DNA of 64,000 nucleotides from Octopus bimaculoides (Eukaryota): assembly GCF_001194135.2 (NCBI RefSeq), contig NC_068998.1, forward strand, positions 49,602,259 through 49,666,258, read 5' to 3'. The first letter of the stretch is position 1; the number at the start of each line of letters is the position of its first letter. This document shows positions 3,724 to 17,812 of this stretch, one piece after another. The notes under the pieces were generated by a model that saw only the letters and a list, made by a program, of their open reading frames with translations, was not told the DNA's origin and made no database searches. A program made the translations under genes and the position numbers.

Positions 3724-6700
3724 TCACACCAAGGTAGATATAATAGGTATCATGAATATGATGTGAGGTTTCATAATGCCAGGCAGGCTAGCGGTCGAAT
3801 TTGCTACGTTAAGAAAATAGAAAAACAATTATATTTTAATGCTCATCAAGCATTTCGATTTCAATGCAATTTTAACTTCATGTCAACAAGATTAATATAT
3901 AAATGCTGATTTATTCTTTGCATGGTTAAATTCATAACAGTATATTTAAAGTTTACGAACTGATTTTTTATTCACCATTAAGGGTTACAGAAAGAGCGAA
4001 CAGACAAGGGGATGCACATAAAACGATAACCGAGGTTAAAAATTTAAAATATAAAATATAATAGATGACAATCCTGAAATGAGAGACGGGTGTAACCCCA
4101 CAAACAACGTTCAATCAGTGAACCCTTTATGATCATTTTCTTCTCCCTTAAGCAGACACATACACTCAACATGCTTGCCAATTTCTTTCATCTTTTCTCA
4201 TATACCCTGAGTGGTAAGTATCTCTCCTCCAGCCTTATTTTCCTTTTAAGGCGGAAAATTTAAAAAATTAACCAAACCAAGGCTGGAGATCTCTGTCACT
4301 ACTCCTTCCATGGGTGTTCTCCACACAACCTCTTTTTCCACAGCCACTACAGACAGAAAACACACCTTCCCTTGCCTGTTCAGAGGGGGCGGTGGAACAA
4401 TCTTTATTATTGTTTAGGAAGGCAGTTATACAATTCCCAAACGTGACAGTAGTTCTTCGACAGAAACTCACAATTCCGAAATACTGTTCCCACCGCATCT
4501 TAGCGAGTTTATCTCGAACTGGTAAGGCTCCTCGGTAACATTGCCAAACCAGGGAGCTTTGAAAGTCATCCAAAGGTCCCAGGAATAAAGCACTGAAGTG
4601 CCTATGCATATACTTCATACAAAATTTCTCAACGAGAGAATATACAGAACCATAAAACAGCTGACTTCCGAAATCGCTTATAATAATTAATTCGTTTTAT
4701 TGGCCACAAGGGCTAATATCAATTAAAAACATATAAGGACAAAGACAGGACGAAGGTTACAAAAGGTTTTGTCCGAAAAGGTAGGAAAGTTCGTCTAAAC
4801 AGAGGAAGAAAACGGAGAAAGATATAAATAAATAGATAAATAAATAAGTAGAACTCCCAAAGGGGGGGGGCGCTTCGAAAAGGCAAAGGTTACACGTGGA
4901 AAAACCCATAAAACCACGGGAGCCTGGTCAGAAAAAATAAGAAAGGGGTATAGAGCCCTTTCTCCTTTTACAATAATGATTTAAATTAGCTAAAATATTT
5001 CGTTTTCCAAGCACCTAAATTTCGTTTTAATGTTAGAGGGACATCGAATCGCATTAAGAAAGTATAACTTCTTTGTCGTGTGAAATATAATTCGTTGATA
5101 TTTCGTTTTTGCTTTATTTACTTTCTACTTTCAAACAATTTAAACACTGAAATAATTTTAAATAACATACCAATGCAGTTATCATGATGAAGCTTGGAGA
5201 AGTGTTTCGCACAGCCATGCTTCACTTTTCCTAAACAGGTTTCATAGTACTCCATACGGCTGCAGAGAATGAAAAAAAAAAAAAAAGAAAAATAGGGAAA
5301 TATACCAGAGGAAATACAATAATCTAGATAATAGTCATTTGCCGTCACAGACAGTACAACATGTCATGCCACTAAAATTAACAGAAATTACCACATGTTC
5401 TTGCAGGAAAAAGGTAAGTTAACTACGAATGTCTATTTTAATTTAAAGTTTAACTTAATTTTATTAATAGCAGTTTTCTCTACATATTGCATTTTTGTAC
5501 ATATTTTGATAATGTTTGTCAAAAAAAGAAACATTTAAAACAAGACACAAACATTCTTCTTTTGATGTATTTATCTAAAGTAAATTAAAATTTACCCAAT
5601 TTTAATTAGCATTTTTGTTCTTTTTCATAAATATATACTTACTCGTGTGCTAGTTCTACACATTTAAAAAAATTTTACTGTCTTAATGTTTTGCGCTCTT
5701 GTCCCATTCTGTATTATTTATATATATGTACTTAGCTACATAAAATGGAAGAGGAATGACACAATCGACCATTGCAGCGAGGCTTCCTTGGTTATTTGAA
5801 CAGATAATGAAAAGGTGTGTGGAGAATGGAGGTCATTCCAGAAAAATTTTGATTTATATAATTATGTGATTGTGTGTTTGTGTGTGTGTGTATGTGTGTG
5901 TGTGTGTGTGTGTGTGTGTGTGTGTGTGTGTGTGTGTGTGTGTGTGTGTGTGTGTGTGTGTGTGTGTGTGTGTGTGAGAGAGAGAGAGAGAGAGAGAGAG
6001 AGAGAGAGAGAAAGAGCGAGAGAAATAGAACGAGAGAGTGTCCCCGTTTGTGAATGTGTTTGTGAGAACGTTTGCTGCCTTCAGCGCTATATCATCAGCT
6101 TCATATGGAAAAATATTCCATCAGCATTACCCAAATGATGATGTCATTGGCTTTAAGATACATCCAAGACTTGGACCTTGTGCTATCTGCCCACATAAAT
6201 CATACCAGCTTCACATAATACAGCCCAATTATTTCACCTCAGTAGGACCGTTTCTTTTTACCATTACACTAAAACACACTAAAGGAGAAACAAACCCCAT
6301 AAATTTCAAGAAATCTTTGGACAATGTTTGGACAATTTCACTTCATTAACAAAAATAGAAAAATACAAGCTGTTGTAATAGAGGAGGTTGTAATAAGAAA
6401 ACGCATACAAACTTGCAGTACTCATTATCGGGTTTCTTTTTAGGAAACAGATCCATAGCTTTTGGGCACACCTTCTTGCCTTCTTCGGGGCAATTTTCTT
6501 GCGCAGTGATCCCTAAAAAGTTTAGACATTTTAAAAATGTTACGTGGCACTGATAGAACATTCGGTGAAATCTTAGCAACTTAAAATTTAAGACATCTCT
6601 TACAGAGATAAAGAAACAATAAAAGTAACGAACATTGAGAGTATAAATGAAGCGGATGGGTTAATGAGTTATGTCAAAAGAAAGAGTTAAAAGGAGAAAG

Positions 6701-14818: not shown

Positions 14819-17812
14819 TCACACCAAGGCAGATATAATAGATACGATTAATATGATGTGAGATTTCATTATGCCATGCAGTCTATCGGTCGAATTTCCT
14901 ACGTTAATAAAATAAAAATGAAACGTTTAATTAGATTTTTATGGTGATTACATTCCAAATTCAAAGTATCTTTTAACTTAATGTAAATTTGATTCACATA
15001 GAAATACTGTTTTTGCATGGTTAATTCTGATCAATATAGTTAACGGTTACGAATAAAGCACTGAATTGCCTATAAATATACTTCATGCTAAATTGCTCAG
15101 TCAACCAGAGAGCGTATAGCGGCATAAATTAGTTGCTGTCCCCATTCGTTTATTATAGTCTCTTAAATTCTCAAAATATTTCGCAAAATATGTCTAAATT
15201 TCATTCTAATGTTAGGGAGACGTGAAAACACAATAAGAAATGATAAAATCCTTGTTGTTCGAAATATAATTCGTTGATGTTTATTTTTTGTTGGGCTTAG
15301 TTTATGTTTACAAACAATTTAAAAACTAAAATCATTTTAAATAACATACTTTTGCAGTACATTTCATGAATCCTATCGAAGTAATCAGAACAGCCATGGT
15401 GTACTCTGCCTAAACAGGAAGCATAATAATCAACACGGCTGAAAAAAAAAATGAAAAAGAAAAAAACATAGGGTAATATATGTGAATATATACATTATTG
15501 TACCATAAAATGTATTTCCTTCCAGCCACGCTGTTCTTTCCATTCTGCCATCGCAAACATTGGCGACCAGGAGAGAGGCACTGCAAAAGAAGGACGCACC
15601 AAATGACAGTTCGGCCTTATACTATGATACCTGAGGGTTGCGTCACGTGATTCTAGCGGCGGAAGCCAGGATTACAGCTATTTTGTTACACAGAGAAATT
15701 TTCCGGTAACATTGGAATACCTCCTCGAATATATTAGATAGATAGATAGATAGATAGAAACATACATACATACATACATGCATACATGCATACATACATA
15801 CATACATACATACATACATACATACACACATGCATTTTGATTTTGACATTGTCTGAAGCAGTTCGAAAAACGAACGGAAGCGCTAAGAAAGAAATTCTCC
15901 AAATTCTAACAACCACCTTGTTTTCGATATACGGTATCTATAGAGCACTTTAAACACTATATACATACACACACATACATACATACATACATACATACAT
16001 ACATACATACATACATATATACATACATATATACACATATACATATATACATGTGTATTAACATATAAGCAAATGTGAGGGTAAGCACAGTAGACATCAA
16101 TGTATTAAGTATATTAACTCCATAAAATACAAAACAAATATATGTATACATACAAAAAGAAAATGATAGAGAAAATTAAAGGGATAGAAGACAGGTATTA
16201 CAAGTCAAACAGTGATTCTTAGGGTTCGGTGATCCATGATATTTGTTTATTTAGTTCAACGAAATGTGGTTGTTTGAATGCATTTAACATAGAAAGAGAC
16301 GAACCTCCATCGTCAGAGATATCTTTTCTCCTCTCACCGTTCCCTGTCTTAATAACCCTCTCCCTCCTCTAATACATTTAGCCCGCCACATTTAATCATT
16401 CCCTGTTTGAATTTCTCTGAATTAAATTTTTTGGTGTCTGATTTACTAATCCCCACATTTGCGTGTATATACGCTCAACCTGATCCCTTTTAAGCCTTTC
16501 TTTACCTTGTGGATTTTCCCCTTTAAAGACACCTCTTTCTTTAGAATTAATACATGAAAACGAGTTTGTTTCATTTTATGATTTCATACCTTTAACAAAA
16601 ATAGAAAAATGTAAGCTGTTGTTACAGAAAAAGTTGTAATAAGAAAACGTATATATACTTGCAGTAATCGTCGTCTTTTTTCTTTTCAGGAAACAGATCC
16701 AAAGCTTTTGAGCACACCGTCTTGGCTTGTATGGGACAGCTACCATCCGCAGAGATCCCTAAAAATGTTTAGACTTTTCTAAAATCTTTACGTAACGCTG
16801 ATACAACACTCGATTAAGTCTTAACATATTAAAATTCTACAGAGTTTCATGAGGTTGTAGCCAAGACACTGTAATATGAAATCCATCGGCACGATTAACA
16901 TCGGACAACTGTGTAGTAGAGATGAGACACAGAGAGGCATATAGAGAGGGGGGAGGAGAATAAGGCAAGGATGAAGAAATAGATGAAGAGGTAACGAATC
17001 AGAGTAAAATGGACGGAAATTGATTGAGAGTAATCCATAAATGAAGCGGAAGGATTGATCAGTTATGTCTAAAGATATGGTTAAAAGGCGAAAGAATGCG
17101 ATGTGAGAAATACTGAAGAAAAAGAGAAAGAAGCACAGTGTTAAATAGATAAAAATAGGGGAAGTTAAATAGATAACCAAGAAACAAAGAGAGAAAGAGA
17201 GAGAGAGAGAGAGAGAGAGAGAGAGAGAGAGAGAGAGAGAGAGAGAGAGAGAGAGAGAGAGAGAGATTGTAAGTTTGAGTTAAAAAGAGAGAAAATTTCA
17301 AGATAGAAAGTGAGAGATGTTGATGCAAGAAATTTGTGGTCAAAGAAATGAGGGCGCTAAAGTTATAAAACGAAAGATATTGGTTTCAAATATGGCACGA
17401 TTCCAGCAACAGTCGGGGAGAAGATAGGTCGATTACATGGACCCCAGTACTCGACTGGTATTTGTTTTATCAACGCTAAAATGATGAAAGGAATATTCAA
17501 ACTTGATAGAATATGAATTCAGGTCGTAAAAAAAAAAAAAAAACAGTCGAAATGCCACTACAAGTTTCGCCCGGCGCGCTAACGATTCTGCTACCCGAGA
17601 AAGGGTAGCGTAGCAGCTGAATAGAAAGGGGAAGAAGGAATTAGGTAAATGGGAAGGGAGAAGCTAAATTAAAATAAAGAGATACAGAGGGGAAAGTCAG
17701 AACGTGTTTATCATGCAAACATTTAAAACACATTCTTGTCAATATGAAGATGGTTGTCTCACAGTTACTTACCAATAACAGAAAGAGCTAACAGAAGGGT
17801 GATGGTTTTCAT
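14819..17812 (-). CDS. G2: 102-aa secreted six-Cys protein with GPI-signal-like tail (4 coding exons)
   Basis: Exons 17773-17812, 16659-16758, 15350-15438 and 14819-14898, with the same sizes and phases as G1. Protein: MKTITLLLALSVIGISADGSCPIQAKTVCSKALDLFPEKKKDDDYCNRVDYYASCLGRVHHGCSDYFDRIHEMYCKRNSTDRLHGIMKSHIILIVSIISALV*. 58/102 aa identical to G1. Confidence 0.88.

What the first reader, a model, noticed from the sequence alone, without database searches (positions are those of the whole stretch)
5171..16758. Signature of positive selection between recent duplicates G1 and G2
Hand-counted nucleotide differences are 7/40 (signal exon), 23/100 (exon 2), 31/89 (exon 3) and 11/80 (tail exon), versus about 12/180 in a sampled downstream non-coding block (2851-3030 vs 13970-14149). 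In exons 2-3, 30 codons change amino acid while only 5 of the 31 unchanged codons carry a silent difference. All six Cys, the frame and the splice sites are kept. A mature domain diverging faster than neighbouring non-coding DNA is the pattern seen in toxins, immune receptors and gamete-recognition proteins.
Basis: partly seen in the sequence, partly recalled or inferred. Interest (0 to 1): 0.78.

Follow-up and report, generated by a model that had tools for sequence, protein, structure and literature searches.

The report
Fast-evolving old octopus gene duplicates
Two neighbouring Octopus bimaculoides genes for small cysteine-rich surface proteins have changed their protein sequence about as fast as unconstrained DNA, but they are old duplicates, and the claimed proof of positive selection fails because its "neutral" yardstick is an unusually conserved stretch.

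Summary
Frame, GT-AG splice sites and all six Cys are kept. The genes are Octopus bimaculoides LOC106870879 (G1) and LOC106870881 (G2), on the minus strand. The assembly gap (8633-9213) is intergenic and touches no compared exon or intron.

- Pairwise dN/dS is 0.93-1.06 for the whole CDS and 0.77-0.81 for exons 2-3. It is not different from 1 (p = 0.6-0.87).
- Aligned non-coding DNA between the copies differs by about 22%, not 7%.
- The sampled block is the most conserved non-coding stretch of the unit, and it is equally conserved in O. sinensis.
- The duplication predates the bimaculoides/sinensis split (44 informative sites against 5), so the copies are not recent.

Fast protein evolution is nevertheless real. 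Between G2 and its O. sinensis orthologue, exons 2-3 differ by 24% against 12% for neighbouring non-coding DNA (p = 5e-6). A three-sequence site model gives p = 0.04. Plain decay is excluded by the absence of indels and stops and by the kept Cys.

G1 and G2 belong to a large, uncharacterised, octopus-expanded tandem family. Its members are small three-helix, six-Cys proteins with a hydrophobic tail typical of GPI-anchored proteins, distantly related to the RGM N-terminal domain.

The parts
7302..7341 (-). G1 (LOC106870879) exon 1: start codon and signal peptide, 40 nt, phase 1
   Evidence: 100% match to XP_014772604.1
6413..6512 (-). G1 exon 2: first half of the mature domain, Cys 1-3, 100 nt
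5171..5259 (-). G1 exon 3: second half of the mature domain, Cys 4-6, 89 nt
3724..3803 (-). G1 exon 4: NST motif, hydrophobic C-terminal tail (GPI-signal-like) and stop codon
17773..17812 (-). G2 (LOC106870881) exon 1: signal peptide
16659..16758 (-). G2 exon 2
15350..15438 (-). G2 exon 3
14819..14898 (-). G2 exon 4: tail and stop codon
2786..3085 (-). It carries a polypyrimidine tract, a CAG acceptor and an AATAAA signal. It may be the end of the 3'UTR or an alternative last exon.
13915..14216 (-). G2 copy of the conserved 3' block
13717..13926 (-). Insertion of about 210 nt that G2 shares with its O. sinensis orthologue and that G1 lacks. It marks the duplication as older than the species split.
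9762..10666 (-). Upstream block of the G1 unit. It is 90-94% identical to the G2 upstream block and has a 200-nt stretch with no difference. It is a post-speciation copy or gene-conversion tract. O. sinensis has no such block upstream of its G1 orthologue.
18420..19243 (-). Upstream block of the G2 unit, at the orthologous position of the O. sinensis block L002 7095-7985
8633..9213 (.). Assembly gap, intergenic, 1.3 kb upstream of the G1 ATG; unresolved also in the chromosome-level assembly
23106..26866 (-). Paralogue Gx: exon 1 26830-26866, exon 2 24766-24859, exon 3 23106-23194
32730..34509 (-). Paralogue G3 (LOC128249883): exon 1 34473-34509, exon 2 33623-33722, exon 3 32730-32818
38082..40513 (-). 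Paralogue G4: exon 1 40477-40513, exon 2 39832-39931, exon 3 38082-38170
48505..53222 (-). Paralogue G5: exon 1 53186-53222, exon 2 49787-49880, exon 3 48505-48592 (88 nt)
56861..56948 (-). Paralogue G6 exon 3. Its exon 1 lies near 59300. Its exon 2 was not found and may lie in gap 58252-58662.

Best explanation
G1 and G2 are two intact neighbours in a large tandem array of an octopus-expanded gene family.

What the genes encode. Each gene has four exons: a signal peptide, two exons that make a roughly 60-residue domain with six Cys, and a tail exon. The domain is predicted to form three helices. The tail is hydrophobic, as in proteins that receive a GPI anchor. The domain is distantly related to the N-terminal domain of repulsive guidance molecules (RGM_N).

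History. The G1/G2 duplication is older than the O. bimaculoides / O. sinensis split; paralogue divergence is about 1.8 times orthologue divergence. Since then the scaffold has been held by purifying selection: the signal peptide, the six Cys, a few hydrophobic positions, the reading frame and the splice sites.

Mode of evolution. The remaining, presumably surface, residues turn over at or above the neutral rate. The gene-wide dN/dS near 1 is therefore an average of constrained sites and very fast sites. It is not a demonstrated excess of amino-acid change. Diversifying selection on a minority of sites is likely but unproven.

The low-divergence flanks have two causes. One is a conserved 3' element, probably the transcript end or an alternative last exon. 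The other is a post-speciation copy or gene-conversion tract upstream.

Shown: gene models, counts, orthology, divergence profile, dN/dS, exclusion of decay. Inferred: GPI anchoring, three disulfides, ligand or surface recognition as the function, and selection as the cause of the fast turnover.
For: Gene models and counts.

dN/dS.
- G1 against G2: 0.93-1.06 whole CDS, 0.77-0.81 exons 2-3, not different from 1.
- G2 against O. sinensis: 0.64-0.69 whole CDS, 0.77-0.88 exons 2-3.
- Three-taxon M0 omega: 0.96.

Orthology.
- In three-way non-coding alignments d(G2,Osin-A) is 0.11-0.13, while d(G1,G2) and d(G1,Osin-A) are 0.19-0.31.
- In the four-way promoter and exon 1 alignment, 44 informative sites support (G1,Osin-B)(G2,Osin-A) and 5 support (G1,G2).
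- G2 and Osin-A share a 210-nt insertion that G1 lacks.

Not decaying.
- 4.8 indels are expected in the CDS from the non-coding rate and none is seen (P = 0.008).
- P(no stop, ATG kept) = 0.04.
- P(all six Cys kept) = 0.018.

Fast evolution.
- Orthologue exons 2-3 differ at 46/189 sites, against 188/1623 for intron 3 plus the 3' flank (p = 5e-6).
- Ka/Ki = 2.0 (p = 4e-4). Twelve codons carry two or more changes where 2.6 are expected.
- M1a against M2a: 2dlnL = 6.47, p = 0.039, about 8.5% of sites at omega well above 1 (sites 41, 44, 73).

Family.
- At least 7 paralogues with the same exon plan lie in the window.
- 46 clusters at 50% identity, almost all from Octopus species.
- Relatives P0007 and P0013 pass the Pfam RGM_N threshold.
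- The Cys3-Cys5 spacing is the same as in RGMB.
- Three helices are predicted at pLDDT 74.
- The RGM N-terminal domain is a three-helix bundle with three disulfides on a GPI-anchored protein (PMC7354924).
Against: - Synonymous divergence in exons 2-3 of the orthologue pair is also about 2.6 times the non-coding rate (p = 0.01, from only about 36 sites). The acceleration is therefore not clearly specific to amino-acid-changing sites. A mutational or gene-conversion input to the exons, or an underestimated neutral rate, could produce it.
- The site-model test rests on three sequences and my own implementation, and it is uncalibrated because the bootstrap failed.
- G1 and G2 themselves score only 15-16 bits against RGM_N, below the 24.2-bit threshold.
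- Foldseek finds no significant structural match, to RGM or anything else.
- GPI anchoring and expression were not tested.
Confidence: 0.45

Rival explanations
1. One reading: G1 and G2 are recent duplicates whose mature domain was driven apart by positive selection, faster than the neutral DNA around it.
For: - Exon counts are exact, and scaffold, frame and splice sites are kept.
- Exon 3 alone (34.8%) exceeds aligned non-coding DNA (22.5%) at an uncorrected p = 0.01.
- The G1-branch omega estimate is 1.5.
- M2a fits better than M1a at p = 0.039.
Against: - Pairwise omega is 0.77-1.06 and not different from 1.
- The G1-branch omega is not different from 1 (p = 0.38).
- Exons 2-3 together against non-coding give p = 0.06, and Ka/Ki is 1.25 (p = 0.23).
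- The neutral block chosen is the most conserved in the unit.
- The duplication predates speciation.
Confidence: 0.12
2. Relaxed constraint only. Apart from a small scaffold, the residues are free to drift, so the protein changes at the neutral rate without any adaptive drive.
For: - Omega is indistinguishable from 1 in every pairwise test.
- M1a, with 24% constrained sites and 76% neutral sites, fits nearly as well as M2a.
- For the paralogue pair, exon and non-coding divergence are similar.
Against: - Drift cannot exceed the neutral rate, yet orthologue exons 2-3 show 24% difference against 12% in flanking non-coding DNA (p = 5e-6).
- Ka/Ki is 2.0.
- With about a quarter of sites constrained, a mean omega of 0.96 implies omega above 1 at the remaining sites.
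Confidence: 0.25
3. Mosaic history by gene conversion or unequal exchange among family members. Patches copied from other paralogues create both the very similar flanks and the excess of clustered differences, synonymous and non-synonymous alike, in the exons.
For: - The upstream block 9762-10666 against 18420-19243 is closer between G1 and G2 (d = 0.086, with 200 nt identical) than either copy is to O. sinensis (0.145). O. sinensis has no such block before its G1 orthologue.
- Exon 2 gives a star-like pattern of differences (23, 29, 29) instead of the orthologue tree.
- Synonymous divergence is raised along with non-synonymous divergence.
- Many codons carry two or three changes.
Against: - No donor was found. 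Other paralogues in the window are only about 25-30% identical in protein and would be poor substrates.
- Intron 3 and the 3' flank next to exons 3 and 4 follow the clean orthologue tree.
- A conversion between G1 and G2 after speciation would make exon 2 more alike than 23% different.
Confidence: 0.15
4. One of the copies is a decaying pseudogene, which would by itself give dN/dS near 1.
For: Omega is near 1. Neither protein has a described function.
Against: - No indel where 4.8 are expected (P = 0.008), no stop (P = 0.04), six Cys kept (P = 0.018) and all eight splice sites kept.
- The G2 orthologue in O. sinensis is intact, with a single in-frame 3-nt indel.
- The signal exon shows omega of about 0.4.
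Confidence: 0.03

Closest known systems
N-terminal domain of repulsive guidance molecules (Pfam PF06535, RGM_N; structures 4uhz, 4bq6, 6z3h)
   Same: - A small domain of three helices with six Cys. RGMB-ND is a three-helix bundle with three disulfides (PMC7354924).
- It sits on a protein with a C-terminal membrane-anchor signal; RGMs are GPI-anchored.
- The Cys3-x8-Cys4-x7-Cys5 spacing is identical to RGMB.
- Two family relatives pass the Pfam threshold.
   Different: - G1 and G2 score below the threshold, at 15-16 bits.
- They lack the rest of an RGM: there is no von Willebrand-type domain and no autocleavage site, and the whole protein is 102 residues.
- No structural match was found by Foldseek.
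- They occur in dozens of tandem, fast-evolving copies rather than in a few conserved ones.
- Binding to BMP/GDF ligands is untested.
Lineage-specific tandem families of small secreted or GPI-anchored disulfide-rich proteins with a fixed Cys framework and hypervariable surface (for example Ly6/uPAR three-finger proteins, defensin-like families, conopeptide superfamilies). The comparison rests on my own knowledge.
   Same: - Conserved signal peptide and Cys framework, with a variable mature region.
- Exon boundaries that separate signal, mature domain and tail.
- Tandem birth-and-death arrays.
- Omega near or above 1.
   Different: - The fold is different: helical rather than beta-rich or knotted.
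- There is no evidence of venom, immune or reproductive expression.
- Here omega above 1 is not demonstrated.
GDNF/GAS1 domain proteins (a UniRef automatic name for family member A0A0L8GPX5)
   Same: All-helical, disulfide-stabilised extracellular domains on GPI-anchored proteins. One family member carries this automatic label.
   Different: No Pfam GDNF-family match was found for that member or for any other tested. The label is a lead only.

Membership tests
Gene pair under positive selection (dN/dS criterion) | Pairwise dN/dS significantly above 1 after multiple-hit correction | tested here: not met
   Omega is 0.93-1.06 for the whole CDS and 0.77-0.81 for exons 2-3. The likelihood-ratio test against omega = 1 gives p = 0.87 and 0.60.
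Gene pair under positive selection (dN/dS criterion) | A site model with a class of omega above 1 fits significantly better | tested here: inconclusive
   M1a against M2a on G1, G2 and Osin-A gives 2dlnL = 6.47 and p = 0.039. This rests on three sequences only, my own implementation and no calibration.
Gene pair under positive selection (dN/dS criterion) | Coding change faster than neighbouring neutral DNA | tested here: inconclusive
   G1 against G2: 28.6% against 22.5%, p = 0.06, Ka/Ki 1.25. G2 against its orthologue: 24.3% against 11.6%, p = 5e-6, Ka/Ki 2.0, but Ks/Ki is also 2.6.
Recent (species-specific) tandem duplicates | The paralogues are closer to each other than to the orthologue in a sister species | tested here: not met
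   Informative sites are 44 against 5 for the orthologue pairing. Non-coding d(G2,Osin-A) is 0.11-0.15 against d(G1,G2) of 0.19-0.29. G2 and Osin-A share an insertion that G1 lacks.
RGM_N domain (PF06535) | Profile match at or above the Pfam gathering score (24.2 bits) | tested here: not met
   G1 scores 15.9 bits and G2 15.3 bits. Relatives linked to them by the family profile do pass: P0007 at 37.9 bits and P0013 at 29.1 bits. Homology is therefore likely by transitivity, but direct membership is not shown.
RGM_N domain (PF06535) | Three-helix bundle held by three disulfides | tested here: inconclusive
   AlphaFold model of the mature domain: helices at 4-14, 29-43 and 47-61, pLDDT 74. Six Cys are invariant. 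Foldseek finds no significant match to RGM or anything else.
RGM_N domain (PF06535) | Cys spacing of the central motif as in RGMs | tested here: met
   The family consensus D-x2-y-C-x8-C-x7-C aligns with the RGMB sequence DSEFCKALRAYAGCTQRTSKAC, at E = 0.13 for the PDB search.
Full-length repulsive guidance molecule | An RGM C-terminal region with an autocleaved von Willebrand-type domain | tested here: not met
   The protein has 102 residues, of which about 60 are mature domain, and no other Pfam match.
GPI-anchored protein | N-terminal signal peptide plus a C-terminal signal (small residues at the attachment site, a short spacer, a hydrophobic end) | not testable with these tools
   The sequence shows ...C-x-N-S-T-x-S/R-L-x-G-I-M-K-x-H followed by 13 hydrophobic residues ending the protein. 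Most family members have such a tail. No GPI predictor or experiment was available.
Pseudogene | Frameshifts, stops or lost splice sites; indels at the non-coding rate | tested here: not met
   None of these is seen. P = 0.008 for indels, 0.04 for stops and 0.018 for the Cys.

The most novel reading that the evidence does not exclude
Octopuses carry a previously undescribed, chromosome-clustered expansion of dozens of genes. The genes encode small proteins made of an RGM-N-like three-helix domain with a GPI-type tail. Their exposed residues are under diversifying selection, so the array would form a variable cell-surface or ligand-binding repertoire. Examples would be modulators of BMP/GDF-type ligands or recognition labels, comparable in logic to the known octopus protocadherin expansion.
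Probability: 0.15. Interest if true: 0.65.

Novelty: new member of a known kind. Interest (0 to 1): 0.35.

Why it matters
For the finding as written, the lesson is methodological. A single conserved block made old paralogues look recent and made near-neutral protein change look like selection.

What remains is still of moderate interest. A large family, so far found almost only in Octopus species, has no described function. It has a fixed six-Cys helical scaffold, a likely lipid anchor and one of the fastest protein turnover rates compatible with staying intact. Its distant link to the BMP-binding domain of RGMs gives a concrete, testable idea of what such proteins might bind. Neither the gene identifiers nor an octopus RGM-like expansion appeared in the searched literature.

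Tried and rejected
- Rfam scan of the whole window, to see whether the conserved blocks are RNA genes. The only match is an unrelated hammerhead at 40913-40961.
- Dispersed repeat as the explanation of the conserved 3' block. It has no other copy in the window, in L002 or in the L001 extension, and its flanks align on both sides. Rejected.
- Scaffolding error as the explanation of the near-identical upstream blocks. Both copies lie on one gap-free stretch, 9214-25610. 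Rejected.
- Resolving the gap with the chromosome-level assembly. It holds the same 581 N.
- Recovering the full O. sinensis orthologue of G1. Only its promoter and exon 1 fall inside L002. It is not annotated as a protein, so it could not be fetched.
- Fold searches with two models. Nothing was significant.
- Direct PDB sequence search with relative P0013. No hit.
- Pfam GDNF-family match for the member that UniRef names GDNF/GAS1. None.
- ORF scan of the intergenic DNA. Only low-complexity frames appear.
- Parametric bootstrap of the M1a/M2a test.
I used the database copy P0003 after a regular search returned it.
- Literature searches for the gene identifiers and for an octopus RGM-like expansion. 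Nothing found.

Full report
Identity and gene models.

The window is Octopus bimaculoides DNA. It matches at all 17,377 compared bases (window 1-17377) to chromosome record CM046618.1 of assembly GCA_001194135.2, N run included. The two genes lie on the minus strand.
- G1 exons: 7302-7341, 6413-6512, 5171-5259, 3724-3803.
- G2 exons: 17773-17812, 16659-16758, 15350-15438, 14819-14898.
All introns are GT-AG. The translations equal the annotated proteins XP_014772604.1 (LOC106870879) and XP_014772605.1 (LOC106870881), both labelled 'uncharacterized'.

Each protein has 102 residues from the conserved ATG:
- a signal peptide;
- a domain of about 60 residues with six Cys, split 3 + 3 over exons 2 and 3;
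- an N-S-T motif;
- a 13-residue hydrophobic C-terminus.

The assembly gap.

Positions 8633-9213 lie between the two genes, 1.3 kb upstream of the G1 start codon. No exon, intron or compared block crosses the gap. The chromosome-level assembly keeps the same 581 N, so continuity across it is unknown. This does not bear on the comparison.

The observation.

There is no indel, and the Cys, the frame and the splice sites are kept. In exons 2-3, 30 of 63 codons are replaced, 5 are silent and 28 are identical.

The non-coding sample is real only after a 10-nt shift: 2851-3020 against 13980-14149 is about 93% identical. At the stated coordinates without gaps, 132 of 180 positions differ.

The baseline is not neutral.

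BLAST blocks between the two units are 70-79% identical. In 90-nt windows of the aligned blocks, non-coding divergence runs from 4% to 40%. Pooled aligned non-coding divergence is 21.1%, or 22.5% without that block. Even this is a lower bound, because about half of introns 2 and 3 cannot be aligned.

Against 22.5%:
- exon 2 (23%) is ordinary;
- exon 3 (34.8%) is high, at an uncorrected p = 0.01;
- exons 2-3 together (28.6%) give p = 0.06, with Ka/Ki of 1.25 (p = 0.23).

dN/dS.
- G1 against G2, whole CDS: 0.93 (NG86) and 1.06 (YN00, ML).
- G1 against G2, exons 2-3: 0.77-0.81.
- Signal exon: about 0.4.
- Tail exon: well above 1, but resting on about one synonymous change.

My GY94-type pairwise likelihood gives omega of 1.06 (p = 0.87 against omega = 1) for the whole CDS and 0.79 (p = 0.60) for exons 2-3.

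The duplicates are not recent.

A search with G2 returned O. sinensis LOC118766390 (68% identical), and its locus was fetched as L002. L002 holds this gene, here called Osin-A. About 14.4 kb downstream of its start, L002 also holds the first exon of a second copy, Osin-B.
- Non-coding DNA of the G2 unit aligns to the Osin-A locus in long blocks of 83-86% identity. The G1 gene body aligns to it at only 69-71%. The G1 promoter aligns best to the Osin-B promoter, at 84.7%.
- In three-way alignments of the tail and 3' region and of the exon 3 region, d(G2,Osin-A) is 0.11-0.13. d(G1,G2) and d(G1,Osin-A) are 0.19-0.31.
- In a four-way alignment of promoter plus exon 1, 44 informative sites group (G1,Osin-B)(G2,Osin-A) and 5 group (G1,G2). 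The distances are 0.126 and 0.148 within orthologue pairs and 0.24-0.26 between paralogues.
- G2 and Osin-A share an insertion of about 210 nt (G2 13717-13926) that G1 lacks.

The duplication is thus roughly 1.8 times as old as the species split.

What the similar flanks are.

The 3' block is about equally similar in all three comparisons (d = 0.05-0.12), and G1 is as close to Osin-A as to G2. It is single-copy in the available sequence. In all three sequences it keeps a polypyrimidine tract, a CAG acceptor and, about 70 nt later, AATAAA. I infer a functional transcript element. It is either the end of the 3'UTR or an alternative last exon which, read in phase from exon 3, would add Q-V-P-V-S-N and stop, giving a tail-less isoform. 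This is untested.

The upstream block is different. Between 9762-10666 and 18420-19243 the divergence is 0.086, with 200 nt identical. Either copy differs from the O. sinensis block by 0.145. O. sinensis has the block only upstream of Osin-A. The G1 copy is therefore a post-speciation duplication or conversion tract. Both copies sit on one gap-free contig, so it is not a scaffolding artefact.

What survives of the idea.

The orthologue pair gives a cleaner test.
- G2 and Osin-A differ at 5/40, 29/100, 17/89 and 5/80 positions in exons 1 to 4.
- Intron 3, which aligns end to end, differs by 9.5%. The 3' flank differs by 12.4% and the promoter by 14.8%.
- Exons 2-3 (24.3%) exceed intron 3 plus the 3' flank (11.6%) at p = 5e-6.
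- Ka/Ki is 2.0 (p = 4e-4). Twelve codons carry two or three changes where 2.6 are expected at the non-coding rate.

Drift alone cannot exceed the neutral rate, so relaxation alone does not explain this. However, the path-averaged synonymous divergence is raised as well: Ks/Ki is 2.6 at p = 0.01, from about 36 sites. Silent changes in codons with an unchanged amino acid (0.15-0.18 per site) agree with the non-coding rate. The excess is therefore compatible with three causes that I cannot yet separate:
- repeated adaptive hits at a subset of codons;
- multi-nucleotide or conversion input to the exons;
- an underestimated neutral rate.

On the three-sequence tree:
- M0 gives omega of 0.96;
- M1a gives 24% of sites at omega 0.14;
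- M2a adds 8.5% of sites at omega well above 1 (positions 41, 44, 73), with 2dlnL = 6.47 and p = 0.039;
- branch estimates are 1.5 (G1 plus stem), 0.67 (G2) and 0.77 (Osin-A), none different from 1.

A bootstrap to calibrate the site test failed for time.

Not pseudogenes.

From the non-coding indel rate, 4.8 indels are expected in the CDS and none is seen (P = 0.008). Simulated neutral change at 22.5% leaves no stop and keeps the ATG in 4% of trials. It keeps all six Cys in 1.8% of trials. Purifying selection therefore holds the scaffold, and the mean omega near 1 hides heterogeneity.

What the genes are.

The window holds at least seven minus-strand paralogues with the same plan: exon 1 of 37 or 40 nt, exon 2 of 94 or 100 nt, exon 3 of 88 or 89 nt. 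They are G1, G2, Gx, G3, G4, G5 and G6. An eighth lies just beyond the window start.

A profile search of 1.84 billion representative proteins finds 46 clusters. The sampled ones are almost all O. bimaculoides, O. sinensis or O. vulgaris 'uncharacterized' proteins. Many lie on the same chromosome, and most end in a hydrophobic tail. Some carry 2 to 8 repeats of the domain.

Evidence on the domain:
- G1 and G2 hit Pfam RGM_N only weakly, at 15-16 bits against a 24.2-bit threshold.
- Relatives P0007 and P0013, tied to the family at E = 3e-33 and 3e-17, pass it at 37.9 and 29.1 bits.
- The family profile aligns its Cys3-x8-Cys4-x7-Cys5 motif to RGMB chains in the PDB, at E = 0.13.
- The RGM N-terminal domain is a three-helix bundle with three disulfides on a GPI-anchored BMP/GDF co-receptor (PMC7354924).
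- The model of the G2 mature domain has three helices at pLDDT 74.
- Foldseek gives no significant match.

I therefore call the domain RGM-N-like, with homology likely by transitivity. I do not file G1 and G2 as RGMs, because the rest of the RGM architecture is absent.

Verdict.

The counts are right. The inference from them is not. The genes are old, intact, very fast-evolving members of an uncharacterised octopus tandem family. Positive selection on some sites is plausible but not shown. The decisive data are more orthologues, a better neutral rate and polymorphism data.

Noticed in passing
window 40913-40961 (-): Type I hammerhead ribozyme, Rfam RF00163, 36.4 bits against a gathering score of 34. 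It lies about 400 nt upstream of the first exon of paralogue G4.
   Followed up: no
window 23106-59332 (-); L001 22146-22298: Five more paralogues of the same family (Gx, G3, G4, G5, G6) lie in the window with the same exon plan, and another lies just beyond the window start. G5 and G6 have an 88-nt exon 3, which changes the phase into the last exon. Gx and G5 have a 94-nt exon 2. Exon 2 of G6 may lie in gap 58252-58662.
   Followed up: partly
protein P0037 (WP_234446203.1): A partial 'Campylobacter fetus' hypothetical protein on a 322-bp contig is a member of this octopus family. This probably reflects cephalopod DNA contaminating a bacterial assembly.
   Followed up: no
proteins P0006, P0007, P0008, P0012, P0013: Some relatives carry 2 to 8 tandem repeats of the six-Cys domain in one protein. 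One of them (P0006, 8 repeats) is on another O. bimaculoides chromosome. One (A0A0L8GPX5) is auto-named 'GDNF/GAS1 domain-containing' in UniRef.
   Followed up: partly
protein P0042 (KAG8199063.1, spider Oedothorax gibbosus): A 435-residue spider protein with two repeats matches the family profile at E = 7e-5 and RGM_N at E = 0.004. This hints that the domain exists outside cephalopods.
   Followed up: no
window 3960-4966: G1 intron 3 is about 900 nt longer than that of G2 (1367 against 451 nt). The extra DNA is specific to G1 and includes a 116-codon open frame at 4268-4618 (-). It is probably an insertion and was not identified.
   Followed up: no
window 6750-7301 and 17143-17772: The first roughly 600 nt of intron 1 are shared by G1 and G2 (d about 0.10-0.21). 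They have no counterpart after exon 1 of either O. sinensis copy, which suggests a deletion or replacement in O. sinensis or an exchange in O. bimaculoides.
   Followed up: partly
window 11070-11655 and 22043-22631: The G1 unit also carries a 78%-identical copy of DNA that lies far upstream of G2. That DNA matches O. sinensis sequence upstream of Osin-A (L002 317-524). The G2-G1 intergenic region has thus been rebuilt in O. bimaculoides, and the junction may lie in the gap.
   Followed up: partly
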